Positions 1 through 58,569 of a DNA stretch of 64,000 bases are shown piece after piece. The stretch is from Lepidodermella squamata (lineage: Eukaryota; Animalia; Gastrotricha). The translations under genes and the position numbers were made by a program. Below the pieces are notes generated by a model. That model ran no database searches. It saw only the letters and a program-made list of their open reading frames with translations, and was not told the origin of the DNA. The DNA lies in assembly GCA_047495785.1 (NCBI GenBank), contig JBLDXI010000029.1, positions 310,001-374,000 of the forward strand, in the 5' to 3' direction. How positions within the stretch are numbered: the first letter of the stretch is position 1; each line of letters opens with the position of its first letter.

Positions 1-2096
1 TAAATGTTTGTCTTTAGTACCTGCAAAAGGCTGTCTCCTAGTCCTGATTTCGCGTCGTTAAGTGATTGGAACATAAGCGGGGAGCCTTCATCACCGTCGC
101 AGGGCACATTCAAATCACGAGTGGCAGATTGGAAGCAGCTGTCAGTCGCTGGTTCGAACCCATCTTTCCAAGAAATCACGCAGTTTTCATCATCGAGCTT
201 CACGCCATGAACAAATCTTGGCAACGTTCTACTTGTCGGGCCGGATCGGCCATTTTTACCCCAGCCGGCTGTAAACTGGAATGAGCTGTGATCGATACTG
301 TTTGAATCTTTGCCATAGATCGAAATGTCGTTTACGTAAGCTGAGGTCATGTCGATTGGTGATTTCAACTTCAGCAGAGCAATGTCTCGTTCTGAGTTAC
401 CGGATCGAATAACGTTGGATATGGCATGCGTCTTTTTGTAGACAGAAGAGACTGCGAAGTCGTGAACACCAGTCACAACTGGAAGCTTGTATGCATCGCT
501 TGAATTCACGCATTTAGCCGAGGTTAGGACCCACAGTTCGTCGATAATCGAAACAGTGCACATGGTTTCATTGCCGAATACGTTGCCAAGGACGCCGAGC
601 CATGGAAACTGACCAGCTCGTGGGATTTGAGCTGATGACGACGTGTGAGCTGGAATCGGTGACAGCGGCAACTTCGGCTGTCCAGGCATCGCGACTTCAT
701 GAGTGTTGCGGCAGGCGCTAATTAGACGCTGGATCTCGGGCCAGGATAGGTCTGAGTAGTAAACCGATAAGCAGGATAGGCTGTCTCCACGGGCTAACGC
801 CCCGCCGACCCAAGCAAAGCCAATTTCTACGCCGGTAATACCGCTCATGTCAACCGCGACAGTTTTGGTTGTCTTTTGGGCGACACCATGCTTGTTGTAG
901 ATGGTGATTTGCTGAGAAAACGCGTTATAACTGAAGCTAACGAAATTCCAGACATAGTCTGTGCTCAGCATTGTAGATGCCACATCGTATCCTCCAGCAG
1001 ATAGGATTACTTTATTACCAGAGTAGTAAATTTGTGGCAGCCTGCGAGATGAGGGAATCGAGTCCGCCGAGAACTGAAATACTCCACCCTTCGAGTCTTT
1101 TTTACCCAGCCTGAGGAAAAACGAGACAGTGAAAGACTTTTTCGTATTTTGGAAAGCAGAATGCGAGAATCGGAACATTCCATTATCAGTGTCTTTTGCT
1201 GATACGATTGCGTTGAGCTCCCCTCCGAATGGACCGTTCGCTGGGACGAAATAACCATTGGTAGGAAAACTAGGGGAAAGGTCGTTCTTGCTCAAATCTT
1301 TAAACTTGTACTTATTGGTTAGGGGCCAGACTGCTATCAGGTTGTCAGTTGAAGGCCACATTGACGGGTACTCGCCCTTGTATTTGCAGGCATCACTCAG
1401 CTGACTGATATCATTCGGGCTAAGAACAGAGCTGTGAACTGTCACGCATGCAATAGCTTCGTTCGATTTCAAAATATGCGAAGCGCCATTTTTATCCTTC
1501 GCATAGCCAACAACGTAGCCTGTCATCGAGGTTGGCTCGATATAGAAGTCTCTGAAGCTCTGCTTCACAAAACCAGCTGAGTCGTAGAGTGTTACTTCAT
1601 TATTTGCATCGTCGTAGGTAACAGCGATGAAATTCCACTGGGATGGTGCAAAGAAATTTTCGGCTTTCTCAACGCGGATCGATGCGAATTTCTCGCTATA
1701 GCCGTAAACTTCAAGCGCGTAGCCTCGTCGTATGAGGCCAAGTCTTCTCGGCATAGTGTTTTCCTCCGAAAATATGCCAGTAGTTTCATAGGTGTAAGCA
1801 TTGTAATACATTGTATAAGTGAAGCTGGTGTAAGTGTTCTTAGTGGCGTTGTAGTAAACCATGGCGCTGCTACTCGATTTGACGCTGTAGCTCGACTGCG
1901 GCTCACCGAAAGGCCCATTGTATCTGGAATTTACCACCGCATTGCCGCTCGAGCTGATCGCCTGCTTGCCCGACAGGTCGTTAACACCATTTTTCGCGTC
2001 CATTACCGCGAAGAGCTCAAGACTCTCCGGGCGGACCCACGTTGCAGTAGTTGAACCACTGAGACCAATCAGCGAAAGTAGAAAGATTGAATACAT
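1..2096 (-). CDS. Secreted protein with two LamG/concanavalin-A-like domains plus a C-terminal trypsin-like serine protease homologue (catalytically inactive); 3' end outside window
   Basis: Manual translation from ATG 2096 (MYSIFLLSLIGLSGSTTA, signal peptide) is open to the window edge. There are two LamG-like repeats (NDLSGK...QWNFIAVTYD...IACVTV; IAVWPL..KDLSKN...VWNFVSFSYN...LSCLSV). Protease motifs follow: QFPWL, WVLTSAKC, DIALLKLK, AGWG, PCDGDEGSPL. Absent from the ORF track because there is no stop in the window. Confidence 0.85.
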   Translation of the reverse strand, partial: MYSIFLLSLIGLSGSTTATWVRPESLELFAVMDAKNGVNDLSGKQAISSSGNAVVNSRYNGPFGEPQSSYSVKSSSSAMVYYNATKNTYTSFTYTMYYNAYTYETTGIFSEENTMPRRLGLIRRGYALEVYGYSEKFASIRVEKAENFFAPSQWNFIAVTYDDANNEVTLYDSAGFVKQSFRDFYIEPTSMTGYVVGYAKDKNGASHILKSNEAIACVTVHSSVLSPNDISQLSDACKYKGEYPSMWPSTDNLIAVWPLTNKYKFKDLSKNDLSPSFPTNGYFVPANGPFGGELNAIVSAKDTDNGMFRFSHSAFQNTKKSFTVSFFLRLGKKDSKGGVFQFSADSIPSSRRLPQIYYSGNKVILSAGGYDVASTMLSTDYVWNFVSFSYNAFSQQITIYNKHGVAQKTTKTVAVDMSGITGVEIGFAWVGGALARGDSLSCLSVYYSDLSWPEIQRLISACRNTHEVAMPGQPKLPLSPIPAHTSSSAQIPRAGQFPWLGVLGNVFGNETMCTVSIIDELWVLTSAKCVNSSDAYKLPVVTGVHDFAVSSVYKKTHAISNVIRSGNSERDIALLKLKSPIDMTSAYVNDISIYGKDSNSIDHSSFQFTAGWGKNGRSGPTSRTLPRFVHGVKLDDENCVISWKDGFEPATDSCFQSATRDLNVPCDGDEGSPLMFQSLNDAKSGLGDSLLQVLKTNI

Positions 2097-16466: not shown

Positions 16467-17321
16467 TTTCAATGGCTAGTCAATTTCAGGTAATTTTTCG
16501 ACGATTTTTTGATGAGATGCGCACTTGGCGGCGAAAAAATTGTGAAATAACACTTTGTTTACAAGTTACCATGTGTGTTTATCCTCGGTTTCTTCCATTG
16601 GGTCTGGTAATTAGTGAGACTATAAGTATCGTAGCTTCTTTGTTTGTTTGAACTTGCCGTTTTTTTGAGAGAAAAAATGCGTGCGCAATCTCATGCGAGG
16701 TCTCTTTGTTTACAAAACAAAGCGGCTTGATGATTCGTCCGTAATGCTTTTACCTGCACTCGCTGTGGGGAAGTACACGTTTCGTGGGTCGATGCACCCA
16801 TGAAACAGGGATCCATATGGTTGACATCCACGGAAAGCAAGCTCGTTGTGCGAAACGATCAAGGTTTATCAAAGTTGTATGGACCCGAAAATACTTCATC
16901 GAAAGTTTGTTGTTATCTTGGGATTTCATGTCCATTTTATGTATAACTTGCGCGAGCTCAGTCCCCGATTCGGACTTAACAACCATTTTCACAGCCCCTA
17001 TATCATAAAAAAGTGTATTAGGATTAGTAAGTGCATTCCTTTTTCTACCCTAATCTATTTGACCCTTCGCGACATCCGCATTAATAAGACAGCATTTACA
17101 CAAAGCTTGTGCAGCTACCACCCTGGATCTCCCTAATTACTAATAACGGTCAATTAAAAGAACAAGAAATCGATTAGACGGCTTATTTAAACCCATGGAG
17201 AGTAGATCATCTTTTGAATGTGAGCTGTGACCGATTTAGGCAAAAAACTAGAATCCAATCATCCTTAATCCTTAATATCAGAAAATAAAAAGCGAATGAA
17301 AAGGAAACAGAGATTCGTCCG

Positions 17322-27788: not shown

Positions 27789-30700
27789 TTATCTCGGCGC
27801 AGTCACCTCGGCATCTTCAATAGCTTTGCAGGCAATCAACGCAGCAGCTGCCGGTAAATCGATTTCAGCGCTTTCGCCGAGTCGCTTGATCGACAAGTCA
27901 ACGATGTAGCGCTTGAATAACTCCAACATGGTGTTGACACGTGAATGCACCGGTATGATGTGATATTTGATGCCTTTATCCTTGATCTTCTTTAAAACGT
28001 CGATTTCGTTTAGTTTGCACGGACAGCCATCGGGATACCTATCACCGTAGCTACCGAACTGCCGGCCGTGGGGTGGGGCGTCTAATATGTGAATCAGCAC
28101 CTTGCCGCATTCTCCGCGCCAACTCATCTCAGCTGCTCGATTCAAACCATCTAGCACAGCCTCATGATTGTCATCTCCACCATCGGCAACGAGACTCCTA
28201 ATGAACGTTATTGCGTCAGCGGCATCCGTTAAATCTTTGCTTTGTAAAATTAGTTCTCCGTCGCTGTGGTCCCTATAAGCGACCATGCCAAAGCGAATGC
28301 AGCTAGTCTTTTTTCCCAATCTCTGCAGCTGCTCGAAAGACGTACCGATGATGCGCTGAATAGCTTCCACGCACAGTGGAATATAATCCTCCATTGAGGC
28401 CGTAGCGTCCATGCAAAAAACCATGTCCACGCCTGAGAAACAAGTTCTTTCATAGTCGTGGCAAACGAACCGATGGTCTCGCGCGAGAATCGAATCCGAA
28501 TGCCAGGCTGTTTCTTGGCAGAATTGTTTTTCGTCGTGATAATGAGAGCTATCGGGACAATAGAAATTGCACTGGTGAAGAGTTTCATCTGCAATAGGCG
28601 GTGCCCAATTCTGATGTTCCCAGTAGATCCGGCACAAGTATTTGTCGTAGACCTTATCGACATGAGGATAGAATCTCTCGTCTTCGCCGCAATGCTTGAC
28701 GCCGTTTCCAATTTTCTTCTCACCACACATGTCGCCTCCCCTGCAGGGAATCAAGTGGAAATGGGCAGGACCCCTGCGTTTGCATTGTTGCTCGCATGTC
28801 TCCGCAATGAGCTCACGTCCGAGCTCGTAATTCCGCTCCGCCTTCTTCCCAGCCACCACAGCGGGGACTGTGATTGTAACATCGTTTGTCTTGGCGACGC
28901 AGACGCAATCCTCCATATTGCGATGGTTCATTGCCATGTGTACGCCGGCATGTCCGAATTTCTCACGGCAAAAGCTGCGGCACTGCGGGCATTGCTCGTT
29001 GCAGGTGTGTTGTTTTAAGCAGTGATGCGGTTCGTCGTGGTTCCAAGTGCGTTTGGGGAGTAAAAGCTGGCAGCCTCCTCTTTCCTCAACAGGCCTGTGA
29101 TAGGTATATTTGACGGAATTGCCGTTAAACTCAAGATCCCGCCACTCTTCAATGTAATGTATCTCGCACGTTCCGTCAACTTCACACTTTGCCAAGCATC
29201 TGTGCGTATTTTCGCAGAGATGCAGCTTCACAGTCACGCCTCTGCTTCTCGGACGCGGATCAGGAATCTGCTCTGCATGCTCGTCGTGATTGTGAGGGCC
29301 TGTGCATGGTGCATCGCAGAATATGCAGGATTTCAGACAGCGCGTCTCATCGCAAATGTGCGAGTTGTGAGCTTCTGTTATCGACTTGGTGCACATTCTC
29401 GGGCAGTACTTACAAGTTCTAGAGCATTGATGCCTTGAATTGCAGTCGTGATTCAGCGAGCTATCGTGGCCCAGAGCATAGGCACACTTTTTGCGCGTGT
29501 TAGCTCCGCAAACTGCACAAAGCTCTTTGCAATCGTGTTTTGGCTTGTTGCAAATATGATTCCCATCATGGCCAGCTTGGCCTTTGCACGGCAGTGACTC
29601 ACCAAGGCAAATGTCGCAAACCTGATCGCAGATATGGTCCGTGTTGCACCGGCATCGCAGGTTGGCCTCCAACTGCTCCACCTCGCGAGCCAGGCTTAAA
29701 TACTCGTTGCTAATGCTTATCTTGATTTGCAAAGAGGCGATTGCGTCGAGCGCTTGCTTTTCTTTGGTTGCTGCCTCGTCAATTTGCTTTTGCAGCTCTC
29801 CAGGATCTATGTTCAACGAAGGCAGCCTGGCTAGTTTAAGCTGAATTGAAACAACTTGTTCATTGAGAGTTGCTATCTGACCACGAATTATCGCCAAGTT
29901 CTTATCGCAATCAATGAGCGTTTCGAAGTGGCCGAGCCAATTCATCAACTGATCGACAGCAAGTTCCATTTCGTGAATGCAGATGCCAATGCGCTGACGA
30001 CCATTCTCCGCAATTGACTTCATTCTGTCGCCTTGGGATATTTTCTCCGATCGAATTTTCTCCAAATCATCCATCTCATTCTGCTTGATGCAACGTTGTG
30101 ATTTGATTTTTTCGAGTTTCGAAGAATCTCGCTGCAGAGCACTTTTGGCTTCAGCTAGTTGTGATTGCTGCTGCAGTAACAGTTGATGCAAATTCGCGAT
30201 TTCTCCCTGAATTCGACTGATATTTAGCTTAATTTCCTGCAAATCCATAAGAGCATTTGGCATATGTTCGTTGCTTAGAGATAATGAATCGTTCCCAAGA
30301 CCAGAATTAACCGATAGGAAAACAATCTTCTGTCTGGTTTTTAGTAATTCGGTTCTGCTAGCACTCCCCCTGTTAAAAAAAGAAGATTTTATCTTCGACA
30401 ATGCCATAACTTAGACAAAATGATGTAAGTTAGAGTACCAGCACTCCAAACGAAACGTATCCACTGCATAGCCAAAGGATCAGCTATGCTGTTTTTGGAA
30501 AAGCGTTTTGGAAAATGGGGCTTCAAATTTTCATGGCTAATTATGTATAAAAATTTACAATTCGTTTACTGTCGCGATAAAATATGCTCAGACGCCGAAA
30601 AATTGTATCAAAAAGGATATGTATTAATCAGTGTATATTTTAAGGAAAAGTTACGTGTTTGCCCAGAACAGTTCGGTGCTTACATCTATTCCGTTAGCGT

Positions 30701-33700
30701 TTCGGTATAACTCTCTAATTGACGGTAATTGGTTTAACGCAGCACGCAAGCAAGGTTACCTTAATGCTTGTGCGGTAAAACTAAAGCCGCCGTGTCATCA
30801 AGTTTATACCGCACGCTGCGTCAGTTTTACCGTAGAAGAACTATTTAACGTAAGCGTTTGTCTGTGTGAGGCTGAAAAGGCGAGCACAAGAAACATGCTG
30901 CCTATGAGACATGAAGGAATAACGCACACCATGGACCATGGTAACGCGTCAAATTTTCAATTAGCATTGGAAGACATGCACTACAGCGGTTGCGTAACAC
31001 GCGCTATTGTTCGCGAGCGGCTGCGCGCGCGTGCATCATCGGATAACCAATTGTGGCGACGCGGATCCAACTCCATTTCTATTTCTCTATAATATGAGCT
31101 AAACTTACCGCTGAGAACTTAATTTTACCCCACGAAGTATTTGCACGCTTTAGTGTCGAAGTGTAGTGCCGTTTATGGTAAATTGTTTACCGCAACTAGA
31201 GAACAGTGGCGAGATGGAGTTACCGTCATATGGAGAGTTATACCGAAATGCTAGCGATTCACCTCATATTCAACGGAATTTATCTATATAAAACTACCGA
31301 AAACGTATCATGAAAATAGCTTCGCCTCCTTTCCCCAACTATTTCAAGCGGCTGCCGAAATTGACAAAAAATCGCAACACGCGATGAAACTTCATAATGA
31401 TTGCTAAAATACTTTTATGACAATCAAATTTGAGGGTCTCATTGTGCTTGAGGTAAATCGTAGGATTTCTGAGCGCGCGCTGATTGGTCACCGACTACAC
31501 CGACTATTTTCGCTGTTTAAATTGTAAAACCTGTAAATTGTAAACCCCATAAAAACACTGATAAAAACTCAGGTCTCGGGTAAACTTTTTGCATTGGTGA
31601 CATCAACATCTTTGCTGTACTTAAAGCGTGCAATTTTCAGGATAAATTATGATTCGTACATGTTTAGCTAATTGCTAAAGTAGACTTTTTCATCGCAATA
31701 ATTACTAAGAATAATTAACGGTCCTCCCAGCCACCACACCGCGTAATGTTTTGGTATTTGGTAGAAGCGAAAAATGCAACATCAGCTTTTCGAAATTATT
31801 CCGAATTTATTGAACCGTAGGTGATCAGAAAAGGTATAATTTCTAAGGCATATGATGTATTATCAGAGCTATGTAAATTTTTTCTTCAATCATTTCTTTG
31901 ATTGAAGATTCTGATTGAATCCCTAGCCCTAGCTCGTGTCCAAAAATTGCACATAGCGAAGAAATCCCGAAGTCAGGGCTACACATTGATATCAGACTTG
32001 TGAAAAGATTCGCCGGAGAAAGAAAATTGCTGGGTTTAGAGGTTTTAAAATTTGTTGTCGTATACTTCCTTTCTCTTCTAGGCAACCAATGAAAAGTTTT
32101 AAACGACGACTGTTTGCAACGAATGGTACGCAAAAAGTCAAGGCGACAATTAGTGGTAAACCGTTGAAGTTTTTTGGGGGAAAAAGCCAATGTAAAAGGC
32201 ATTACTATTAGGGCCACCTTCCACCTTATTCTCGCTCTTTTCTCGCTGGCCAATCCGCGGCACACGTTAAGAATATGTTATAATGATTATGTTATTTCTC
32301 ATCAATTGATTCACAGCGGAAGCTTGCCCGTCACTTCACTTTTTGTCATTTTGCATCTATCTGAATCCTCGATTTCAAGATATATCATTTATTATAATAA
32401 AGGAGAATCGTACCTTTCTCGCGCAATTTCTATCTCCCATGGTTCCACAGGTACTCCGTGGCTGTTTTTGCCGCTTCGGTCCATCGTATCAGCTTCCATG
32501 GTGTACTTTGTTAGAAGATCAATATGACGTTTCGCTGACTCCTCTATTTCCCTAATTTCAGGAATAAATTGTCCGTGCTGATCAGGGAATTCGGGCGGGG
32601 CCCCTACCGATTGCTCTTGGATATGGATTGCAAGTTGGTCTCCATTTCCTTCTGGTGCACTCTCTGCCGCTGTAAGTAAATCACAGCTGGCTACATCGGC
32701 GGCCGATGGTGATAGTGTTGAATTGATTGAGCGGAGAATTGATTTCAGGTTATCGTTTGTAAAACCATCATATCGGACACCGAAAGCTTCTTCATTGGCC
32801 TGAAATGACTTCAGTTCATTTTGTTTGCGGGACAGGTCCTCATTAATCTGATTCAGTTCCTTTTCTACCACGGAAACGGCAATATCCTTAATTCGAACAG
32901 TCTCGTCTAGGCAACAAATCTCTTCATCCATATCGCTCAATTCAGAACGAAGTTGTTCAAGCTGGCTTTCAACAGCATGAATCTCACTCGCATCCTTTGT
33001 GGGACTTGATTCATCCCATGCAGTTGAAGCGGAGTTGAGGATTGCCTCGTATTGAGAAATCTGTTTCTTGTAATGTTGCCATCTCTCGATTTCAGCCTGG
33101 AGACACTCTGGAGAATCGACAGGCTTGCCACAGGCTTCTATGAGCTCACGCATGAACAATTCTATGCCTCTCAGCACAGTTCCGAAATCTCCTAGAGCAG
33201 GGTCGATATCAACCGCGTCAGCAAGATGGGATGAAAGCACGTCTCCAAGCGGTTTACAAATGGACAGGTAATGAGACCGAAATTCTTCGGAAACGGAAAC
33301 TGCCGACAGTGGTATCTTACCTTCCAACACAATTTTGTCATGCTGTTGTAAATAGCGCTTCTCCTCATCCATCTTCGCATTCATATCACTTTGTAGCTTA
33401 TTTTCACTTTTCTGAAGTTCGCAACGTTCGACGTAGTCATTTCTAATCTTTTCTGCCTCCTCCTTCTCCTTTCTGTACTTGTCGTGCTCATCATTCGCCT
33501 CGGATAGTTGAGACTGTAGCTTGTTGTCAGGTTGTTCGTCCCCCGATGAACTTGGCTTCAAAACGTCAAGCCTCGCTTGTTTCTCACGGCGTTCTGCATC
33601 ATTGGCTTCTTTATGACCCTTCCGTTCGGTGCATCGCAAGTAGCAGGATTCGCACTTGTTCATACACAGAGCAAAGTTGGCTCCTAATCCTTCAATTTTG

Positions 33701-36700
33701 TTCTCAATGACTGTGTGAAAGGCAGCGTGTTCGTCCGGTGACAATACTCGAGAAAGTGAGGTGAGCTCTACCTTTGCACTGTCTCTCATAGCTTCGCGGC
33801 GAGTTCTAACGAACTCGATAATCGCTTTATTGAATAGATCCCAGAAATAGTTGAACTCAACTTTCGAGAACTTGGGATCAACGCTATTGAACAGCTTCTT
33901 CTTAAGAGCTTCACAAATGATCGCATAATCGTCATCATCGGGATACGCAAATGTTGGCACATCATGCTGATTCACTTCAATCACCTTGCCATTACGTGGA
34001 AAGGTTACTCTGAGAGGCGGGCAGTTGATCGCCTGCCCCAAGTTGCCCCAAGAAGCGACAATTCGTCTTTCAGCGAGGTCTCTTAGCAACTCTTTTCTAT
34101 GACTGTCTCCATCTTGAAGATCGTCCTGGGTAACCATCATCATGACTATCTTGAGTGATTGAAGCAGTTCCGTGGCTGAGTCCCAGCGGTTGGCATCCAT
34201 TCCCTTGCCTCTTATGAATCCATTCCGCAGGTGATCAAGATCCTCCAGAAAATTCGAGTTTGTCGGGGCGTCGAGACATTCAAGCGATACTGAGCTACCA
34301 AACAGTCTCTGAAGAAATTTATAACTGCCGTTGCGCAGTAACATATCAAGTTGTCTGACATATTCTTCTTCCAATCCCTCTCTATCATGCTCAGCCACAT
34401 TGCGGATAACCGTCATCAGCGAACCCTTGAAGTAACTCTTACCGATGATTCGACCGACCGCATTGCTCAGCTTGCCGAAGAAGTGACTAATATGTTTACT
34501 GAAGTCAAAATTTTGATTCAAGATGGTGATGTCGCAAATGGCTGCCAGAACTGTGAGTAGCTTGATCTCCTCGAGTTCCTTGCGGTCACTACTGAACAAA
34601 CCCTCGCAGTCCAATATAATAAAATCGCGCTGTTCTTCCTCGGGGCCGCTTAGCATCCTGGCGTAACTCATCCAGATGCCGTCGGTGCAGCGGGACGCGG
34701 CGACGCTGAAACGCGTTCCAAACAGGCGGTTCAACAAGTAGCTCTTCCCCGAGGACTGCACCCCAGCAATGCCGATGACGCTAACACGTCGACCGCTGCC
34801 TAGCAATTCCAACACACTTTCGAGATGTCCTACAGTTACGCGACCAGCAAGCTCGGCAATTTGCGTTGCTTTGTCACTCCTCATTCGAAGCCTTCGACCG
34901 TCGATCAGTGGTAGCAGGTTGTTCTCTTCTATCGTGCATATGTGGACTGGCGCACGTGTGAGGAGAACGCTGATGAGCTGTTCGTTTTCAAGCGTCAAGG
35001 CTTGCAATTGCAGAGAGTCCAATCGCTTCACTCCGGTAGGCTTAACGGGCCACTTATTCGAGTATCCTACCACCAGTGGTTTCAGCTTGATCTCGTCTTT
35101 GTCAACGACCACGTCGTAACAGATATTCCCCGGACAGCCGACAAAGTCAGACGGTGGGCCGTATTTAAGATAACTTGCATAGACTATGTCGATGACTGGA
35201 TTTCCACGAATCTTCTTTTGCGTGACTTCTGAATCTTTTCCCTTTCGAACTGAGAGGTCGGACGATAGTCCGGGCAGAACGAAGCTCCTTAATTCTTTCG
35301 GATCCAGGATCGAAAGATAGACATTCGCCTTGTCGTAGAACAGTTTCATGTTCCGAGAACCATCGCAATCTATGGATCCCAGTAGATTGTATGACCAATC
35401 ATAGATGTCCGTTCTGGATGCACTTCGCAAGATGAAAAAAGATCGGTTTTTCGTAAGATGAACGCTCTCGTAAATTTCGCCGTTCTTGCCCCGCAGAATC
35501 CGCCTTTTTGAATGATCTAGGTGACAACATTCTTCCACTTCCTTCGTAAAGAGATTATAACGGAACAGCTGACCATTTTTCATTAGAAGCAGAACATTCT
35601 GGCGATTCTCTTGGAGAGCCATCGAAAGGAGTTCACCTTTTATATTAGGAAGGGGGAAATGCCTGCCTTTGTTCGAACATTTGATGGAGTCGCTAAATGT
35701 TATATCATATAGATCCATCGCATGGGCATTTTTATCCCAGGCTGCGATCATTGCTGACTTGTCGCCAGGTTCGTAAGCGATGACAGCGCCTGACTTCATC
35801 TCCGCAATTCTCCGGACGTCTTTGGATGAAACTAGCAAAAGTAGGGTGGTTGCGTAATTTGTGCAGACCATCGAAACCAAGAATGCCTCACTATTCCACA
35901 ATGGCATACATGAATTTACGGTACCATTTCGCAAGACGTCGGAAAAATTGCGTATTTCCAAGCTTCGAGGAAGCAGTTCTCGCAATTTTTCTGGCGTTAT
36001 TTTGCACATCCATTGCAGTGGGGCATAAGTCATTGATTCGAATCCACCATCGCTACTATGAACAGCGTTAAGCATGCACGGAGACAAAGTCAGACTTAAT
36101 TTTTCTTTCGACTCGCTAATATTTGCCACCGAAGACAAGATGTCCGTGCACGTTATGTTGAAACACTGAATTTGGCTATGGATTTCCTCGCTTCTAGCAC
36201 GCACCATCTCGAAAAGTCTCGGCTGAACGATGCCCGTAAAGTCGTTGTAAGCATCGGACTTTTGTCCTGTAATCTTGGCGTGCCAATAGTTCCACAACGT
36301 ACTTATGAATTCGTCGGTAACTGCTGAAACGCTGAAGCTGGATTTTGCAGAACTGATATTAAAAGAGCTTGTAACTTTGCTAACAAGCATTGGCTGTAGA
36401 AGTTCGGCAGTATTACCATGAACCTTCAAAGCTTTGCAATTGAATTGATAGCTGCGGGTGGAGGACGAATAATTGCCGAAGCTGTTTGTGTAGCCGACAG
36501 GACCCCGCAGCTCTTTTTCCACACTTGGCATCCACGTTGATAACTCATCTGCGAACAGCTTACTTATGGCCTTCAGATTTTTTGTGTACTCTTCGTGCGC
36601 TTTTGTTATTTTTTTTCTCATTTTATCGTCCCGGTAGTAGTTAGCCCCGAGTTTCTTCATTTCAACTTCCACGGCCGATTCACTGCCCCGCGATGTTTGC

Positions 36701-37575
36701 ACCAATGATTCGATGAAACAGTTGATTTTCACGATCCAATCCTCAGCAACACCATCACTCGTGTCGGAGAATTCAGTGTGTATTAGGTATTTACTGCCAT
36801 TATCGTTGCAAATCAGTTGCAGCAGCGCATTTTTCCCGAATTCCTGCGTCAATAGATCTGCTGACGTGTTTACTCTAAAGAGCTTAACATCAGGAATATC
36901 ACGCTCTTCCAGCCTAAAATTTGCGCTGCCTAACTTGCGCTGCGACGTGAATGGGGTTTCGGGGCCGGGATGAAAGTTTGAAATTCCATCCGAACCGAGA
37001 CAGAGATAGATCACTGGGCACATATCCTCCAGATAGCGAAAGAGAGTGACAAGAATGTCTTCCTTGTTGAAACCATCCTGCTTCATAAATTCACCGTCAG
37101 CGATTAGCATAAAAACGAAGTTTTCATTTATTGCTGCAACATAAAGATTCCGGCAGCAATCGCTGCCTTTGGGTATTAAGACATCCTCAACGCCCAAAAG
37201 TTGTTGAGCGGTTGCAACAACTTGATCTCGATCTCCGAAGCAGGCTGCAACTTTGCTGGCGTCATTTAGGGCTATGTGCAGGCGTAGCGCTTCTAAGCCT
37301 TCCACGTTCACGACAACCTGATTAATCGAATTCACGGCTTCGCCATAAAATAGCTTAAACAAATTCAGCTGAGAACCACTAGTCATCCGATCATTTAAAA
37401 AAAATCTAAAGGAACGGTTAAGACGTGGATAAGTAATTGCTGTCTCAGACCCTTTGTGAAGTAGGGCAGGCATAGTCAACGTATTCAAGGCAGAGTTAGA
37501 ACACGGTTGCAGGGATTTTAACTGAACTTCGCAGCCGCTTTGGAAATTACATGAATTTTGAACGAATTCGAGCAA
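27789..37575 (-). CDS. Giant (~2,550 aa) GB1/RHD3-VLIG-type GTPase with coiled coil, Cys/His-rich repeats and C-terminal vWA domain (2 large exons; start uncertain, first ATG 37473)
   Basis: G1 GVQSSGKS (34741-34764), G2 RCTDGIWM, G3 LDCEGLF. Cys/His repeats (CNTDHIC, H.C...C..C...C....GH). vWA MIDAS DATAS, VAYRDH, GGDDNHEAV, DAPPHG. A phase-2 intron 30370-32413 (GAAAG|gtacga...tcttctttttttaacag|G) joins ORFs 32392-37575 and 27789-30407 in frame. Confidence 0.8.
30692..31256. mobile_element. Non-autonomous TIR element with 4-bp TSD (possibly Sola-like) inside the GTPase intron
   Basis: ~37-bp imperfect TIRs CGTTAGCGTTTCGGTATAACTCTC..GACGGTAA / TTACCGTC..GAGAGTTATACCGAAATGCTAGCG; TSD ATTC at 30688-30691 and 31257-31260. 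Confidence 0.75.
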
Positions 37576-39978: not shown

Positions 39979-41066
39979 TCACTTGTGTTTTGCATCAATC
40001 AGACGCTTATCGTCCTTATCGTAATCGATAGCACGCCTTTCCAGTTTCCAAATATTGCCATTTCTTGCCAGTTGGTATTCGGAAAGAAAGTTTGCACCAA
40101 GCAAAGCTGATAGTTTGTATTGAACGGGTTGGAATTGACCGCGAGCTGGAAGCTTCTGCTTTGCCATTCCTCGACGAGGTGCCGTGCTTATCACGATAGG
40201 GAAGTAAGCTGGGTACCTGAGCATACAACCTTCGTGTAGAACCATTTCGATTTCATAGCCTAAAGTGATGTCTTCGGTATCCGAACTCGGTGCAACTTCT
40301 GGCAACGAAATCGACAACTGCCGCCAGACCAAATACCCATGCATCGGCTCAGCCTTCAACGCCAAATCGGTGCCTGAGAAAGACCATTCCTTCAGAGTAT
40401 CGCACTTTGACAGGAAGCAAGAACCAGCACGGTAAGAAATCAATTGTTTCAACTTGATGTCTAGATTCAACGTCCTAGGATCAATTTTGTGGTTGTTAAT
40501 AACGCTTTTTAGCAACATCATGAAGTTGAGATTGTCTGCTTTGAAATAATAGGTATGGCAGTCCAATTTGATGGTAAACTCGATCCCGCTTGTTCTTGAG
40601 TTAGAATTAATTCTCGATTCGGGTTTTGGAATGTTCCGGCTACTCGTGTAGATGTGCTCCAAAATGTAAATAGCTACTGGCTTTGATTTCAAGACTACAT
40701 CTTCAGCTTGCGGTTGCGTTAAAAAGGCTTGGATTTCATATGAAATCGATCCATATGCGCTGTAGAATGAAGATGGTAGATTAGGCGGGAGTTTGAATTT
40801 GAAACTTCGGCTGTTGATTCCAAGCTCATTTCCGAATGCCTTAAAGTCAGTCGACAAACCGAACAAGGTTCTATGAGAAACGACTTTCTTCTCGGATTCT
40901 AGCAGCTCAACTCGAGAATCGCAAAGTAATCGGACTAAGACAAAAATGGGCCCGGTAATGATGGGGCTGGTGATTTCAAACCTGATCGAGCCGCTTATTG
41001 TATCGCCGCAGAATTGAAGAAACCTTCATTTTTCGCAAGTTTTACAACAAGAGACTTTACGACCAT
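39979..41066 (-). CDS. Arrestin-domain protein (alpha-arrestin-like), with a 1-nt frameshift near 41020
   Basis: MVVKSLVVKLAKNEG then (shifted) FCGDTISGSIRFEI; FKFKLPPNLPSSF...YGSISYEIQA; LKQLISYRA; ITLGYEIEM..FPIVIST. Confidence 0.75.
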
Positions 41067-44171: not shown

Positions 44172-45125
44172 TTATTTATTGCAAACATGATTTCGTGGCA
44201 CAGTCCCAATTGTAATAGGAAATTCAAGGCAGGCACTTCTAACGTCTTTATAATAAAACACTGCTTGCAAGTCATAGCTCACGATGATGTTCCCAGCAGT
44301 GATACTCGGCGGAATATTTCCTAGCTTCACGTTGGGCCTAATCACCACATACTCTCCTCCCTTGGCAGATGGAGTCAGAGCTATATCGACATACCATACC
44401 GACAATCGATCAGAAACCTCCTTCGTCAGTCCTTCAGCAGTGTAAGTGCTCGATCGAACCAGTTTGAACTTGAGTTTCAATTTATCCAACTCAACGCTAT
44501 GAATCGTCGCATTTTTCAGCGTGAACACTATATTGAATTCATCGCCAATCATGTAGTAACCACGGTGTGGCATAGAAGCCTCTATTTCCAGCGAATCGTT
44601 GCCGATATATGCGTATCGCTTCATCGGCCTCAACAGATCAGGGCTTGCAGTTTCGATATCTTCGAGCACTTTAAACTTGAGCGTCTTAGCAACATGATTG
44701 TATTCCTCTCCAAGCATCTTCGTACCTACAACTGCTGTTATTTTGTAGGCGATTTTGCCGTAATGGCTTTTGAACGATGTCTTGGCGGTCCATGGTATGT
44801 AAAATGAGAATCGCTTCAAGTGGTGACCTGGGCAGAGATCAGCTTCCGTACAGAATTCGAATTCTAGCTCGAGACTTGCCAGGGTTACGATAGATGAAGC
44901 TGTTTCTTTCCAAAACGTCTCCCAGTCCTCGTCCTGCTTTTTGTCTTTTGGAAAGTCAACTTTTGAATTCCCAGTTAGCGTTATAATAGCATGGAATCGA
45001 TCGGCTATATTGCTCCTTTTCGACATTTTGTATTTGAAGACGCCTTGGACTCGGCTTCCGATTTGATAGAGATGACGCGCATTGGGAACGTTTTCGAATT
45101 CAATGCGATATTCTTTAAGACCCAT
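44172..45125 (-). CDS. Arrestin-domain protein (alpha-arrestin-like), intact and intronless
   Basis: YQIGSRVQG; PGHHLKRFSFYIPWTAKTSFKSHYGKIAYKI; GYYMIGD; IPPSI...IIVSYDL...FPITIGTVP. Confidence 0.85.
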   Translation of the reverse strand: MGLKEYRIEFENVPNARHLYQIGSRVQGVFKYKMSKRSNIADRFHAIITLTGNSKVDFPKDKKQDEDWETFWKETASSIVTLASLELEFEFCTEADLCPGHHLKRFSFYIPWTAKTSFKSHYGKIAYKITAVVGTKMLGEEYNHVAKTLKFKVLEDIETASPDLLRPMKRYAYIGNDSLEIEASMPHRGYYMIGDEFNIVFTLKNATIHSVELDKLKLKFKLVRSSTYTAEGLTKEVSDRLSVWYVDIALTPSAKGGEYVVIRPNVKLGNIPPSITAGNIIVSYDLQAVFYYKDVRSACLEFPITIGTVPRNHVCNK

Positions 45126-51812: not shown

Positions 51813-54800
51813 TTAATCCATGCGCTGGCACTGGGTCGGAACATCACGAACAGTGGTGATGTGGACAGGGTGCGACTTGAGGCGCAGGCTGCCGAAAGTA
51901 AGACCCTGGCGAGAAACAACCATGCGGCGGGCAATTTCACGAGTTTCCTCGTTATCGGGCAGGCAGCTCATCTCAACAGGCTCAGAGCGAGTCTGGACAG
52001 ACTTGCAGTTGGCAGAGCAGGCCGGCAGAGCTTGCTGCGAGAAGCAGACGCGGCCAGCATCCTTCTGATACTCGACAACAGTTTTGCGGGCAATGTGGCA
52101 CTGTTCGTGGGTAAGTTCCTTCAGGCGCTGTTCGATGGCGTATTCTTCAGAGCTGGACGGCTCTTCTTCATCACGGCGCATGCTTTCAACAGCCTGACGA
52201 TCCGAGGCGACGGTGTTACGGAGAATGGCCTTTTCCATACGAATCTGGCGGATGGATTGGTCTTTCTTCTCAAGCGGCAACTTGTCTGAGGTCAGATCGC
52301 CGCAAAGGCCGCACAGGGGGGTGGCGAATCCAGTGCGGAGGGGCGAGGTCTTGATTTGGACGTTCTGGCTGTCCAAAGTAACGATGATTCCTGAGGAGGC
52401 TTCTTCAACTTGGCAGGCGTTGTCGTCAAAGCGGCGAACGCTCAGCTGCTGTTCAGAGGATGCTTCGGTTGAAGCAGATTGGCTGTAACCGTTTTGTTGG
52501 ACGTTCGAAACCGAAACACGGCACTCCTATAAGATTAAAAGCAATACTTTTCCGAATCATGGCAAATGATGATAAATTTACCTTGGTGACGCGGTAGATT
52601 TGTTCGCCAACACGGATAACAACCTGTCGTTCCTTGGTGTTCTCAACGGCAACGTAGAGGATGGAGTCAGCCGGAAGAGGGGCAGAGGCGTTGTTGTAAA
52701 GAACCTTGGCCGGCTTGTTGTGGATGCATGAGGCGGCGAGGACGGTCGGGTGATCGGCTGAAAGGAGAACCTCGAACTTGGCACCGTCGAACGAGCTCAG
52801 GGAGTTGTGGCGGGAGAAGCTAGATTGCTTGGGAGTAGCGAGCTTGCAAGTCGGGGCGAGGGGAGTGGTGTCCTTGTTGGATTGGATCATGTTAGCGACG
52901 GTGGAGCGGATCAGGGAGGAAAGAGGGCTGGCGCCGTAGACGCGATTTGGCGGCAGAGCAACGGCCGGGGTTTGCTTAGCGGAGAAGGAGAATTTCGGGG
53001 CCATGATATCGACATCAACCTTCTTCAGATCCTTCGACCAGCGGAATTTGGCGAGGACCTTGCCAGCCTTGTAGCTAGCAGGCTCGAAGTGACCTTGCTT
53101 GAAAAGACCTGGAAAATCAAAGTAGGACAGATTTAGTTAGAAAGAATAGACCTTGGAACATTTCCGAAGGTTCAAATGAAAAGAAAAATTACCTGCGAAG
53201 TTGAGGACCTTGGCGATAATTTCGTCAACACGAGCCGGCATTTGGTCGTAGCGAATGAAAACAGAGACATCACGCAAGTAAAGTTGCTGTTCGAAGCGCT
53301 CAGCCAGGCAAGAGTCAACCATAGCAACCTGCTGCGAAACGCTCGATGCCTTCTTATCGGACTTGGCGACGCAGGAATAGACGTATTCTGCACGCAGATC
53401 GTGGCAGCGGTCGAAGCCATAACGCTGCTCGGCAATGCACTTCTTGAATGACTGGATGAGCTGCGGGATCGACTCAACAGCGGCGATGTGGTTTGCGATC
53501 ATTTCACGAGTAACGCCCTGGGTCTCACGGCGGATCTTGATAGATTCGTCCTTAGATTCAGGTTCAACATTTCCAGCAGTGGTGTCGATGCGGATGACGC
53601 GTTCCAAATTAGCGCCGTAACGCAGAACGTGGTGTGAGCGAAGACGGGTGATGGCTTCGTAGTCTTCGGGCTTGATCGAGCGAGTGGCGAAGGCGCCGAA
53701 CGTTTTATCGACCGGGACAATCGATTCCCACATAGCAGCAGTCTGAGGCAAGTTGAGGTAGACGAACAGACGGCTGGCGGCTGGGGATTTCGCGATGCTA
53801 GCGACCAAACGAGCTGAACGTTGGCCGGACTTCAGTTCAATGACGAGTTCATCCAAGCGAGACGAGGCTGGGGAGGCGAACATCTGACGGCGGAGGTCCT
53901 TCATAGCGACCGGGGAGTTGCGACGGGCGTAGTCTTCGCGAACTTCCTGGCTATCAGTTGGCTGGTCGAATTCGGCAATGGTCTTCTTAAGGGTGGCCGC
54001 ATCAACCTTGCCTCTCAGCTTCTTCGCTTGCTTCTTAGCCCAGAAAATACCATCGCGGACGAAACGGAAAGCCTCGCTCTTGAGGTCGCGCGGCTTGACT
54101 TGCTCTTCTTGTTCGTCGTCTTCAGTTGGCTGTTGGAGTTCGTTATCTTCGTCGCTGTCAGCATTCTTCTTGGAGTGATGCTTGTTCTTGCGCTGTTCGT
54201 GACGCTCTTCAGCCTCCTTTTCCTGGTCTTCTTCGAGCTTTTCAATCTTGACACCAGCGATCTTCTCAACACGAGCGATAACTTCTTCAACGGTCAGCTT
54301 TTCGAGAGTCTCAGTCTTGATCTGTAAATATCAATGAGCTTTGAAAAATCTTCTTTGTAAAATTGAGCTTATTACCTTGATTTCAAGAGGGGTGGCCGAA
54401 GTCATGTCGCTGGTAACGCGCAGGTGCATCGGGCCAGCGAGCGGCTTTTCTGGGTTGTAGACAGCTTCAACAGAGCCCTTGCCGCCAACAAGGGGGGAGA
54501 AGGGCTTGGTCATCTTCTTAACGTTGCAGCGTGAAGATGAAGAGCACAGGGCCTTCTCAACGCGACCAGCAACACGGCGCAGCTTCTCAGGCTCGAATTC
54601 GGTCTCAGGGGTAGATTCGATCTTAGAGGTCAGAGGCTCTTCGAAAACGACTGGGGAAATCGAAGCTTCGACTACGTCAAACTTGGCCTGGTGGGGCTCG
54701 ATGATGAATTTCGGGGAAGATTGCTCCATTTCGACCTTGAGACCGATCGGGAGTTCGAGGCGAAGCTTGGCGTTGATTGCAAGACCCTGGCGGAGGTAGG

Positions 54801-57794: not shown

Positions 57795-57905
57795 GTTTAA
57801 AAATAATTCACGAGGATGTGTTAAAGGATGTCAAGTAAACAAAACAACCGATTATTCGTCCCGAAAACAACTGAATCTGATGAAATTGCACAGTTACTCC
57901 TCGCC

Positions 57906-57912
57906 TTTTATA
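57906..57912 (-). promoter_or_regulatory. TATA box of the vitellogenin gene
   Basis: TATAAAA on the minus strand about 110 bp upstream of the ATG. Confidence 0.45.
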
Positions 57913-58569
57913 GCCGATCGAAGTCACAGGTTGCAACGACCTTCGTAACCTTTGTTAAATTTCGAATTCGCTCATTTCAAGTTCATCAGTGAGAACGCAT
58001 AACTTTCGGGGTCGCAACACTGGGAATTTATTCCTAGCTATTAGTTTATTATCAATTCACATGCTGTTAGTGATGTCTGGATTTTTTTAGCATACAAAAC
58101 TCTCAGTGCACATGCGGGAACAAATGGGTCAATCGGTACAAGCAGCATCAGCATGTGCGCTCTTCCTCCTCTCATCAATTAAAAAATTCACTCGGTGTCA
58201 AATTACAGTGTTATGAACAGCCGCTAAAATCACATCCGTCCACGTGTCTTTTATGTCCTAATACCTAATAGATCAATTAAAAGTCTGATAGAGAACTTGA
58301 GAACTTCTACATTCTACATCGGCCGACAGCCTACCAAATAAATCTCCGACAAACGCTCCGGTTTTTGCTCAAGAACATACTCAGACAGGTTGCTCGTCTA
58401 CAGTCTTACTTATATCAAAGAAAAACCAAGAAAAATCACGTCTTTGCCCAAAACAGTAATAAGATCCTTTATTAATTGACGGGTAACATACTGAGATTCT
58501 TTATTGAGTGTAACAAAACCGACACACTCTAAAGTTCGTTTTTGAGATTAGAGTTCGAATTTAAGTATA

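What the first reader, a model, noticed from the sequence alone, without database searches (positions are those of the whole stretch)
27789..37575. Giant GTPase-Cys/His-repeat-vWA gene of fungal/protist type in an animal: candidate horizontally acquired immune GTPase
Seen: the two longest ORFs splice in frame via a canonical phase-2 intron (30370-32413) into one ~2,550-2,580-aa protein. It comprises a long N-terminal region with a beta-propeller-like stretch, an intact GB1/VLIG-type G domain (GVQSSGKSYLLNRLFGT..RCTDGIWM..LDCEGL), a helical region, a coiled coil, ~400 aa of Cys/His repeats and a vWA domain (DATAS, YRDH, GGD..EAV, DAPPHG...YPDGCPC). Recalled, not searched: this architecture matches large uncharacterised proteins of fungi, oomycetes, early land plants and protists, and this vWA subtype resembles those of amoebozoan and ciliate proteins. 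GBP/VLIG GTPases act in cell-autonomous immunity. The 7.7-kb CDS has one visible intron. Inference: horizontal acquisition, or patchy retention, of an undescribed defence GTPase.
Basis: partly seen in the sequence, partly recalled or inferred. Interest (0 to 1): 0.8.

Follow-up and report, generated by a model that had tools for sequence, protein, structure and literature searches.

The report
Giant GTPase-zinc-vWA gene, rotifer/ciliate type
This animal gene really does encode one 2,546-residue protein that joins an immune-type GTPase to a zinc-binding array and a metal-dependent adhesion domain. It belongs to an unstudied family known otherwise from protists and, among animals, only from rotifers, so an old gene transfer is likely but a defence role is still a guess.

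Summary
Two minus-strand ORFs join through a GT-AG phase-2 intron (30370-32413) into a 7,638-nt CDS of 2,546 aa without stops. It is collinear end to end with a single-ORF relative.

Architecture: an N-terminal alpha/beta plus helical region, a beta-propeller, a GBP/VLIG-class G domain, one Cys unit, a ~630-aa coiled-coil spacer, a ~400-aa Cys/His array that no Pfam model covers, and a MIDAS vWA domain.

Named relatives are ciliates, Anaeramoeba, Amoeba proteus and, among animals, only bdelloid rotifers. A plant/fungal subfamily is the outgroup. The window protein lies in a well-supported clade with bdelloids, Paramecium and unnamed metagenome sequences, and only this clade has the coiled-coil insert. 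Transfer between protists and animals is therefore likely, but it is old, its direction is unresolved, and it is not special to this locus. First-stage notes of this scan report further copies in this genome (not checked).

Immune function is inference only. This copy departs from the family at two nucleotide-pocket positions (G4 RD to RN; P-loop R/K to V), so the G domain is not fully "intact". Short RNA-like contigs link the two exons without the intron; the junction itself was not read.

The parts
32414..37473 (-). Exon 1 (aa 1-1686 plus two bases of codon 1687); first ATG at 37471-37473
   Evidence: collinear with P0001 from window aa 38
30370..32413 (-). Phase-2 GT-AG intron, 2,044 nt, GC 0.39
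   Evidence: Two X1 contig joints (30267-32415, 30308-32455) have normal spacing only if about 2,044 nt are removed
27789..30369 (-). Exon 2 (aa 1687-2546, stop codon at 27789-27791)
   Evidence: collinear with the C-terminal 890 aa of P0001
36109..37377 (-). N-terminal alpha/beta region (aa ~33-237) and helical region (aa ~239-455). A weak structural likeness to a GBP G domain is a lead only
   Evidence: AlphaFold model, pLDDT 74.9. VIA Z 14.2 to the GBP2 G domain over model 33..847. No profile homology to the true G domain
35239..36099 (-). Beta-propeller (aa ~459-745)
   Evidence: WD40 propellers, E 1e-8 to 1e-9; NHL/Sec12, Z 15.9-16.1
34024..34956 (-). GBP/Sey1/VLIG-class G domain (aa ~840-1150). 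P-loop at 34741-34764 (V905 codon GTG at 34759-34761), switch-I Thr within 34672-34692, G3 within 34597-34614, G4 'RN' (N1025 = AAT at 34399-34401)
   Evidence: Pfam; PDB sequence matches Sey1 1e-7 and GBP2 7.5e-6; motif table over 77 family members; coordinates
33613..33669 (-). First Cys unit (C-x3-C-x2-C-x3-C...H, aa 1269-1287), conserved across the whole family
29658..33612 (-). Coiled-coil/helical spacer (aa ~1288-1924), interrupted by the intron. This insert is found only in the window/rotifer/Paramecium clade
   Evidence: heptad and composition scan; weak Pfam coiled-coil hits; insert-length table
28443..29657 (-). Cys/His array (aa ~1925-2329). About 45 Cys/His positions are invariant in 38 relatives; no Pfam model covers it
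   Evidence: (pLDDT 86.9)
27792..28442 (-). vWA domain with a MIDAS DxTxS motif (28392-28415), a GGD..EAV motif, and DAPPHG...DGCPC
   Evidence: Pfam VWA_4; VIA Z 18.6 to the integrin beta-8 beta-I domain, 192 aligned, rmsd 2.9; invariant D422/T424/S426 in alignment A2
30692..31256 (.). High-copy element of 565 bp inside the intron, flanked by inverted repeats (37-nt arms, 86% complementary)
   Evidence: X2 depth 843-3,417 here against ~60-150 elsewhere

Best explanation
One two-exon gene encodes a 2,546-aa cytosolic protein with no transmembrane segment and no CaaX box. It belongs to an undescribed eukaryotic family of giant GTPases.

Shown: the order of parts is an N-terminal alpha/beta plus helical region, a beta-propeller, a GBP/Sey1/VLIG-class G domain, a helical region, a Cys unit, a ~630-aa coiled-coil spacer, a ~400-aa array of invariant Cys/His (presumably many zinc sites), and a vWA domain with a complete MIDAS motif.

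Shown: the protein belongs to a subclade that carries the coiled-coil insert. That subclade also holds bdelloid rotifer and Paramecium proteins.

Inferred: the family reached the rotifer-like animal lineage, or passed between it and the Paramecium lineage, by an old horizontal transfer. It then multiplied, took on host composition and gained an intron.

Inferred mechanism: as in GBPs, atlastin/Sey1 and GVIN1, nucleotide binding drives G-domain dimerisation and higher-order assembly. The propeller end senses or docks. The coiled coil acts as a long stalk. The zinc array and MIDAS vWA tip capture a protein ligand through an acidic side chain, as integrin beta-I and midasin MIDAS domains do. The most likely setting is cell-autonomous defence, but this is untested. 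This particular copy has RN for RD in G4 and Val for Arg/Lys in the P-loop, so it may bind guanine nucleotides poorly and may act as a regulatory paralogue.
For: Gene model.

Exons linked in short RNA-like contigs: the joints 30267-32415 and 30308-32455 span 104 and 103 nt once the intron is removed, against 77-103 nt for ten joints inside exons.

Domains.

Family range. Named members are ciliates, Anaeramoeba, Amoeba proteus and bdelloid rotifers; Cryptomeria and Geosiphon form the outgroup. Vertebrate VLIGs match only at E ~1e-6.

Tree: a 22-row clade at 100/99, and window+P0001 at 100/100. The fungal sequence groups with the plant outgroup, not with the animals. The coiled-coil insert of 330-1,030 aa occurs only in that clade.

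Residence in the host: animal genes flank the locus. A DNA run covers both exon-intron borders in single contigs. A host high-copy repeat lies in the intron. GC/GC3 of 0.47/0.50 is like the neighbours.

Expansion: a tandem pair in Adineta, many Paramecium and Tetrahymena paralogues, and first-stage notes of further copies in this genome (unchecked).
Against: No functional data exist for any family member.

The host phylum was not established here. 'Rotifer' comes from other notes of the scan.

Branching inside the clade is weak: Paramecium+bdelloids gets 91/88 in one tree, while Paramecium is sister to the rest in others. Most close relatives are unnamed metagenome proteins, so neither donor nor direction can be named.

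The Paramecium reassignment of TAA/TAG (established knowledge) would make export of a 7.6-kb ORF from that lineage difficult.

An old paralogue kept in a few lineages would give the same tree.

The splice junction itself was not read, and the RNA label of run X1 is a guess.

The likeness of the N-terminal region to a G domain is weak (Z 14.2, no profile homology).
Confidence: 0.6

Rival explanations
1. Vertical descent with massive loss. Two old paralogues (VWA_2 type and VWA_4 type) existed in early eukaryotes. The VWA_4/coiled-coil form survived only in a few lineages, including rotifer-like animals and Paramecium. No transfer took place.
For: The family spans several eukaryotic supergroups: Alveolata, Metamonada, Amoebozoa, plants, fungi and animals. 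Deep branches are long and the order inside the 22-row clade is unresolved.
Against: It needs loss in all other sampled animals and opisthokonts, and in all other ciliates for the insert-bearing form. Tetrahymena, a fairly close relative of Paramecium, has only insert-less or short-insert forms that branch elsewhere. The fungal member groups with plants, not with animals.
Confidence: 0.22
2. Assembly artefact: contaminant protist DNA was joined to animal DNA, or the two ORFs are separate genes.
For: Every named relative other than the bdelloid rotifer copies is from a protist, plant or fungus. The read lay covered only 29000-33800, so the joins to the flanking animal genes were not examined directly.
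Against: Single contigs of a DNA run span both exon-intron borders at even depth, with two haplotypes of about 60x each. The intron holds a repeat present at 800-3,400x in the same run. One X2 contig laid on the stretch is 130 kb long. GC3 matches the neighbours. Both ORFs are collinear with a single ORF in P0001 and in the rotifer genes. Short contigs join the two exons without the intron.
Confidence: 0.03
3. A housekeeping membrane or organelle remodelling GTPase of the atlastin/Sey1/RHD3 kind, not a defence protein.
For: The best solved-structure sequence match of the G domain is yeast Sey1 (1e-7). The Anaeramoeba relative is auto-named 'protein sey1'.
Against: There is no transmembrane segment. 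The RHD3 Pfam score is below its cut-off (38.7 against 42.4). Patchy distribution, tandem duplication and strong divergence among paralogues do not fit an essential conserved function.
Confidence: 0.1
4. This copy is a decaying or catalytically dead paralogue with no function of its own.
For: Two otherwise near-invariant pocket residues are changed: D to N in G4 (Asp in 71 of 77 members) and R/K to V in the P-loop (68 of 73). Of 35 variant sites listed between reads and window, 22 change the amino acid.
Against: The frame stays open for 7,638 nt. All invariant Cys/His and MIDAS residues are kept. RNA-like contigs cover the exons. In the Cys/His part (29127-29679), 6 of 8 listed variants are silent. 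Some Tetrahymena members also have Asn at G4.
Confidence: 0.1

Closest known systems
Unnamed 'VLIG-type G domain-containing' / 'VWFA domain-containing' giant proteins of bdelloid rotifers (Adineta, Rotaria, Didymodactylos) and Paramecium (database entries only, no paper found)
   Same: Full-length collinear architecture. All invariant Cys/His residues, the MIDAS motif and DAPPHG...GCPC are shared, as is the coiled-coil insert at the same site. They fall in the same clade at 100/99.
   Different: Only 30-37% identical; the best match of all is the metagenome protein P0001 at 43%. The window gene has a 2-kb intron, whereas the Adineta copies are intronless. The window copy has RN in G4 and Val in the P-loop.
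Vertebrate very large inducible GTPases (VLIG-1/GVIN1, URGCP). GVIN1 forms a coat on Burkholderia (bioRxiv 10.1101/2025.03.24.645074)
   Same: Giant size. The G domain matches Pfam URGCP_GTPase above its cut-off. Assembly on a target is the mechanism proposed here by analogy.
   Different: Vertebrate members match only at E 1e-6 to 8e-4 over 15-26% of the G region. They carry other flanking Pfam domains (PF26772, PF25974, PF25496) that are absent here. They have no Cys/His array, no vWA and no propeller.
Guanylate-binding proteins and atlastin/Sey1/RHD3 (dynamin superfamily, GB1/RHD3-type G domain)
   Same: P-loop, switch-I Thr in the (R/K)xT(K/D)GIW context, DxEG, and an RD-type G4 in the family. 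The lead-in strand (LCTIE..G) resembles the GBP N-terminus, as recalled. PDB sequence matches: Sey1 1e-7 and GBP2 7.5e-6.
   Different: No GBP C-terminal helical domain hit, no CaaX box and no transmembrane anchor. Only the first ~95 residues of the G domain align by sequence.
NTPase-plus-MIDAS machines: midasin/Rea1, VWA8, MoxR-vWA pairs, Mg-chelatase (established knowledge; the prokaryotic vWA-MoxR conflict systems are described in PMC7159879)
   Same: A nucleotide-driven engine is coupled through a long linker to a MIDAS vWA domain that grips a protein ligand. The vWA here is closest in fold to integrin beta-I domains (Z 18.6).
   Different: Those engines are AAA+ ATPases, not dynamin-class GTPases. 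There is no homology outside the vWA fold, so this is an analogy only. PMC7159879 mentions no ciliate, rotifer, GBP or VLIG fusion.
NF-X1-type zinc-finger arrays (NFX1, ZNFX1)
   Same: Long runs of repeated Cys/His knuckles attached to an NTPase, as in ZNFX1 (recalled).
   Different: No Pfam zf-NF-X1 hit in any of 38 members, even at E <= 1. The spacing pattern is different.

Membership tests
Giant GTPase-Cys/His-vWA family (unnamed; ciliate/rotifer/Anaeramoeba type) | End-to-end collinearity with full-length members | tested here: met
   BLASTP against P0001: exon 1 E 2e-150 over 1,388 columns; exon 2 E 3e-173 over 909 columns
Giant GTPase-Cys/His-vWA family (unnamed; ciliate/rotifer/Anaeramoeba type) | Invariant Cys/His scaffold, plus MIDAS DxTxS and PPHG...GCPC in the vWA | tested here: met
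   58 invariant columns in the 38-sequence alignment A2 are all present in the window protein
Giant GTPase-Cys/His-vWA family (unnamed; ciliate/rotifer/Anaeramoeba type) | Coiled-coil insert between the first Cys unit and the array (marks the subclade) | tested here: met
   624-aa gap in the window. Gaps of 570-760 aa in bdelloids and P0001/P0003, and 330-1,030 aa in Paramecium. The gap is 5 aa elsewhere
VLIG/URGCP GTPases (Pfam PF25683) | G domain scores above the curated cut-off | tested here: met
   65.9 bits against 55, but only profile positions 176-288 of 396 are matched
VLIG/URGCP GTPases (Pfam PF25683) | Vertebrate VLIG flanking domains (PF26772, PF25974, PF25496, PF26773) | tested here: not met
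   No such hits in either exon at E <= 0.1. They are present in the vertebrate hits P0066-P0070
VLIG/URGCP GTPases (Pfam PF25683) | Induction by interferon or infection | not testable with these tools
   No expression series was available. Only presence in one RNA-like run was seen
GBP / atlastin / Sey1 class (GB1/RHD3-type G domain) | G1 GxxxxGKS, switch-I Thr and G3 DxxG | tested here: met
   GVQSSGKS, RCTDGIW and DCEG are present; Pfam GBP 35.2 bits against 21.1
GBP / atlastin / Sey1 class (GB1/RHD3-type G domain) | G4 'RD' motif with the guanine-specifying Asp | tested here: not met
   The window has RN (N1025, codon AAT). Asp is found in 71 of 77 family members
GBP / atlastin / Sey1 class (GB1/RHD3-type G domain) | Membrane anchor (CaaX in GBP1/2/5; transmembrane hairpin in atlastin/Sey1) | tested here: not met
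   The C-terminus ends ...TAPR. The best 19-aa hydropathy window lies in a propeller strand
vWA domain with MIDAS (PF25106 VWA_4) | Pfam score above cut-off and the vWA fold | tested here: met
   31.5-32.1 bits against 27; VIA Z 18.6 to an integrin beta-I domain
vWA domain with MIDAS (PF25106 VWA_4) | Metal actually bound at the MIDAS site | not testable with these tools
   Only the DxTxS motif and downstream acidic residues are seen
NF-X1-type zinc finger | Match to Pfam zf-NF-X1 | tested here: not met
   No hit in 38 members at E <= 1

The most novel reading that the evidence does not exclude
The family is a previously unrecognised class of cell-autonomous defence machine: a GTP-gated assembling scaffold with a propeller sensor at one end and a zinc-array/MIDAS 'gripper' at the other. 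Its coiled-coil form has been exchanged between the Paramecium lineage and rotifer-like animals. The window copy, with Asn in G4 and Val in the P-loop, is a regulator paralogue with altered nucleotide specificity, analogous to the GMS/GKS split of IRG proteins.
Probability: 0.15. Interest if true: 0.8.

Novelty: new variant of a known kind. Interest (0 to 1): 0.55.

Why it matters
Giant dynamin-class GTPases have only just been shown to build antimicrobial coats in human cells (GVIN1). Here a much older, differently built branch of that class appears in ciliates, amoebae, a metamonad and rotifers. It has ~45 invariant zinc-type ligands and a MIDAS domain, and I found no paper on it.

If it is a defence machine, it would widen the known range of cell-autonomous immunity to include protists and animals without interferon. 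Paramecium, where RNAi by feeding is routine, would offer a tractable system.

The coiled-coil insert shared by Paramecium and rotifer genes is a clean rare-change marker for a gene exchange between a protist and an animal lineage already known for foreign genes.

Tried and rejected
1. Host identification through the 317-aa arrestin-like neighbour gave no hit at E <= 1e-10. Atlas look-ups of the vitellogenin and GPCR neighbours showed only 'animal-like' families. The host phylum therefore stays untested here.

2. treekit's AU test did not finish in two runs, and one iqtree run timed out. The test was done with fast LG+F+G4 searches on 27 rows instead.

3. The constraint forcing all named ciliates together was rejected. 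It is a harsh constraint, because it also has to move Stentor and exclude Anaeramoeba, so I do not lean on it.

4. Giant-virus vector: viral contigs hold only the vWA subtype (32-35% identity, including giant-virus MAGs) and no G-domain relative. The idea is rejected for the whole gene.

5. Internal duplication of the G domain: hhalign of the N-terminal profile against the G-domain profile matched only the overlapping 27 columns. The structural hit to GBP2 (Z 14.2) is kept as a lead only.

6. NF-X1 or any other Pfam model for the Cys/His array: none found. No PDB sequence match outside the vWA.

7. Shared intron with rotifers: the Adineta copies are intronless. The 54-nt 'intron' annotated in Rotaria socialis hides an in-frame TGA at a conserved Trp.

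8. Synteny with the rotifer loci: none seen.

9. The metagenome scan found nothing closer than P0001, which comes from a compost metagenome.

10. Literature searches for VLIG-type, GVIN, GBP plus vWA plus ciliate, and vWA-GTPase conflict systems found no description of this family.
Full report
**Observation**

The two long minus-strand ORFs are present as described: 37575..32392 and 30407..27789. Reading the minus strand, the first ORF leaves its frame at a GT (32413-32412) after two bases of a codon. An AG at 30371-30370, preceded by a T-rich tract, restores the frame of the second ORF. Joining 37473..32414 to 30369..27792 gives 7,638 nt, or 2,546 codons, with no stop.

The best relative, P0001, is a 2,646-aa single ORF on an 89.8-kb compost-metagenome contig. 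It aligns with exon 1 from window residue 38 (P0001 residue 5) and with exon 2 through to the last residues. The start, the end and the union of the two ORFs are therefore all supported by homology.

**Read evidence**

A DNA run (X2) covers both exon-intron borders in single contigs (30289-30780 and 30924-32752). Depth is even, with two haplotypes of about 60x each.

An older run (X1) is guessed to be RNA. It places short contigs on the exons only, and it shows many 'opposite-strand' joints that look like concatenated mates lying 77-103 nt apart. Two such joints link 30267 to 32415 and 30308 to 32455. Once 2,044 nt are removed these span 104 and 103 nt. Molecules lacking the intron therefore exist. 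The junction itself was not read, and X1 also leaves parts of exon 1 uncovered, so its silence over the intron proves little.

The intron carries a 565-bp element bounded by 37-nt inverted repeats. This element is present at 800-3,400x in X2. The flanking genes are ordinary animal genes: a Cys-loop receptor, a C-type lectin, a Kunitz/lustrin protein, two arrestin-like genes, vitellogenin and a class-C GPCR. GC and GC3 (0.47/0.50) match these neighbours. A contaminant join is very unlikely.

**Anatomy**

Pfam finds only the G domain and the vWA: URGCP_GTPase 65.9 bits, GBP 35.2 bits and VWA_4 31.5 bits.

An AlphaFold model of residues 1-860, built with 29 relatives, has mean pLDDT 74.9. It shows:
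- an alpha/beta region (37-237);
- long helices (239-454);
- a beta-propeller (459-745), which matches WD40, NHL and Sec12 propellers (Foldseek E about 1e-8 to 1e-9; VIA Z 15.9-16.1);
- a last alpha/beta piece that runs into the G domain.

VIA also aligns model residues 33..847 with the GBP2 G domain (Z 14.2, 213 residues, rmsd 4.0). Profile comparison finds no homology between the N-terminal region and the true G domain, so a second, degenerate G domain is only a lead.

The G domain has GVQSSGKS, the switch-I Thr in RCTDGIW, and DCEG. By sequence its nearest solved relatives are Sey1 and GBP2/5/1. In 77 family members the G4 motif is (R/K)D with Asp in 71; the window has RN. The second P-loop residue is Arg or Lys in 68 of 73; the window alone has Val (codons AAT at 34399-34401 and GTG at 34759-34761). 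In Ras-like GTPases the G4 Asp reads the guanine base, and Asp-to-Asn shifts preference towards xanthine nucleotides (established knowledge). This copy may therefore bind GTP poorly.

After a helical stretch comes a conserved Cys unit (residues 1269-1287). It is followed by about 630 residues rich in heptad-like, Pro-poor, Glu/Lys/Gln-rich sequence. Then comes a ~400-residue array in which some 45 Cys/His positions are invariant across 38 relatives. No Pfam model matches this array in any of them.

The C-terminal model (pLDDT 86.9) ends in a vWA fold closest to integrin beta-I domains (Z 18.6, 192 residues, rmsd 2.9). Its DxTxS MIDAS motif is invariant. There is no transmembrane segment and no CaaX box.

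**Relatives**

Three searches were made:
- A word-based search with the G region gave 70 proteins.
- An exhaustive HMMER search with the Cys/His+vWA part gave 83 cluster representatives at E < 1e-30. The vWA alone reaches many short proteins.
- A further search used the C-terminal part of P0001.

All three give the same picture. Named full-length members come from Paramecium, Tetrahymena, Stylonychia, Stentor, Anaeramoeba flamelloides, Amoeba proteus (fragments) and bdelloid rotifers: Adineta steineri, several Rotaria species and Didymodactylos carnosus. A more distant subfamily with another vWA type includes Cryptomeria japonica and the fungus Geosiphon. Vertebrate VLIG proteins match only at E 1e-6 to 8e-4 over a small part of the G region.

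No other animal appeared. Most hits are unnamed metagenome or Logan proteins, and I could look up names for only 30 clusters. No protein of this genome itself is in the databases.

In Adineta the gene is intronless and stands in a tandem pair among ordinary eukaryotic genes. First-stage notes of this scan list further copies of the same kind elsewhere in this genome (s1-410279, s1-394034). Several follow-up reports call the host 'probably a rotifer'. I did not check either point.

**Phylogeny**

I concatenated the G/helical and Cys/His+vWA segments of 76 relatives and built a quick tree. I then built a careful tree of 43 rows x 1,015 columns under LG+C20+F+G4. Rows left out of the careful tree were six long branches, near-duplicates from the same species, and some outgroup and metagenome rows.

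The window protein pairs with P0001 (100/100). The pair lies in a 22-row clade (100/99) with:
- the main bdelloid group;
- the Didymodactylos protein;
- a metagenome group (P0003, P0006, P0015, P0097);
- all Paramecium proteins.

Tetrahymena plus Stylonychia, Anaeramoeba and Stentor branch outside this clade. Inside it the order is unsettled. Paramecium joins the bdelloids at 91/88 in the careful tree, but it is sister to all the others in two LG+F+G4 trees.

Forcing window+P0001 to join the bdelloid group costs 9.6 log-likelihood units (p-AU 0.108, not rejected). The fungal Geosiphon sequence joins the plant outgroup (SH-aLRT 100), not the animals.

An independent character agrees with the clade. 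The gap between the first Cys unit and the array is 5 residues in every other member (two Tetrahymena proteins have about 115 and one metagenome row 67). It is 330-1,030 residues in exactly the window protein, P0001, the P0003 group, the bdelloids and Paramecium.

**Reading of the history**

A derived form of the protein is thus shared by an animal lineage and one ciliate genus, but not by other ciliates or by the fungal member. This is most simply explained by horizontal transfer somewhere in this clade.

The transfer is old. The nearest known protein is 43% identical, composition is ameliorated, and an intron with a host repeat has been gained. It is also not private to this locus.

The direction is open. 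The family's diversity lies in protists. However, Paramecium reads TAA/TAG as glutamine (established knowledge), which would cripple a 7.6-kb ORF exported from it. Paramecium is also not clearly basal in the clade.

Differential loss of an old paralogue remains possible; I give it about one chance in five. Viral contigs contain only the vWA subtype, including in giant-virus bins, and no G-domain relative. A viral carrier of the whole gene has no support.

**Function**

Nothing here tests function. The best-supported inference rests on the G-domain class (GBP, atlastin/Sey1, VLIG/GVIN1). All of these act through nucleotide-dependent G-domain dimerisation and assembly, and GVIN1 coats bacteria (10.1101/2025.03.24.645074). 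It also rests on the recurrent coupling of NTPase engines to MIDAS domains that grip protein ligands, as in midasin and MoxR-vWA.

I therefore propose a GTP-gated assembling scaffold. It would have a propeller-bearing sensing end, a long coiled-coil stalk, and a zinc-array/MIDAS gripping end.

Patchy distribution, tandem duplication and fast divergence of paralogues fit a defence or conflict role better than a housekeeping one. Of 35 variant sites listed between reads and window, 22 change the amino acid, and these lie mostly in the coiled coil, whereas the Cys/His part is mainly silent. Reads from close paralogues may be mixed into these counts.

I put about 35% on a defence role. The odd nucleotide pocket of this copy suggests a regulatory or weakened paralogue.

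**Verdict**

The gene is of protist type and rare in animals, and a transfer is likely. However, it belongs to a multi-copy rotifer/Paramecium subfamily of an unstudied giant-GTPase family; it is not a recent lone acquisition, and the immune label is a hypothesis.

Noticed in passing
window 30692-31256 (inside the intron): A 565-bp element bounded by 37-nt inverted repeats (86% complementary). Parts of it reach 800-3,400x in the DNA run, against ~60-150x for unique sequence. It is probably a MITE-like high-copy repeat. No second copy was found in the window with a 17-nt arm probe.
   Followed up: partly
window 58570-61332 (-): A 920-aa single ORF with no Pfam hit at E <= 0.001. By language-model features it resembles class-C GPCRs (7tm_3/ANF_receptor clusters, score 0.96).
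   Followed up: partly
window 52000-58000 (-), ORFs 54331-55851 and 56412-57488: Vitellogenin exons with strikingly high GC and GC3 (0.56-0.69 / 0.65-0.89) against ~0.42 for the rest of the window. This looks like the codon bias of a very highly expressed gene.
   Followed up: no
window 39979-40866 and 44172-45125 (-): Two arrestin-domain ORFs lie upstream of the GTPase gene. The 317-aa one found no relative at E <= 1e-10 in the word-indexed protein search, so it is very divergent.
   Followed up: partly
L004 (Rotaria socialis, GCA_965120315.2) about 17120-17175 in locus coordinates: The 54-nt 'intron' annotated in the Rotaria socialis homologue skips an in-frame TGA at the conserved Trp of the AWH motif just before the vWA. 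That copy may be a pseudogene, or the site may be a sequencing error.
   Followed up: partly
L008-L028 (IMG/VR contigs, some labelled GVMAG): Stand-alone vWA domains of the same DAPPHG subtype (27-35% identity to window residues ~2335-2545) occur on viral contigs, including giant-virus bins, without the GTPase or the Cys/His array.
   Followed up: no
window 29600-30290 (exon 2, coiled-coil part): The DNA run shows a second sequence variant at about half depth with ~5% differences in patches, many of them amino-acid changing. This is either a very divergent second haplotype or a close paralogue laid on the same place.
   Followed up: partly
L002 1-5458 and 10001-17752 (Adineta steineri CAJNON010000098.1): Two family members (2,330 and 2,583 aa) lie in tandem on the same strand, separated by one small gene. 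This matches first-stage notes of tandem copies elsewhere in the window's genome.
   Followed up: no
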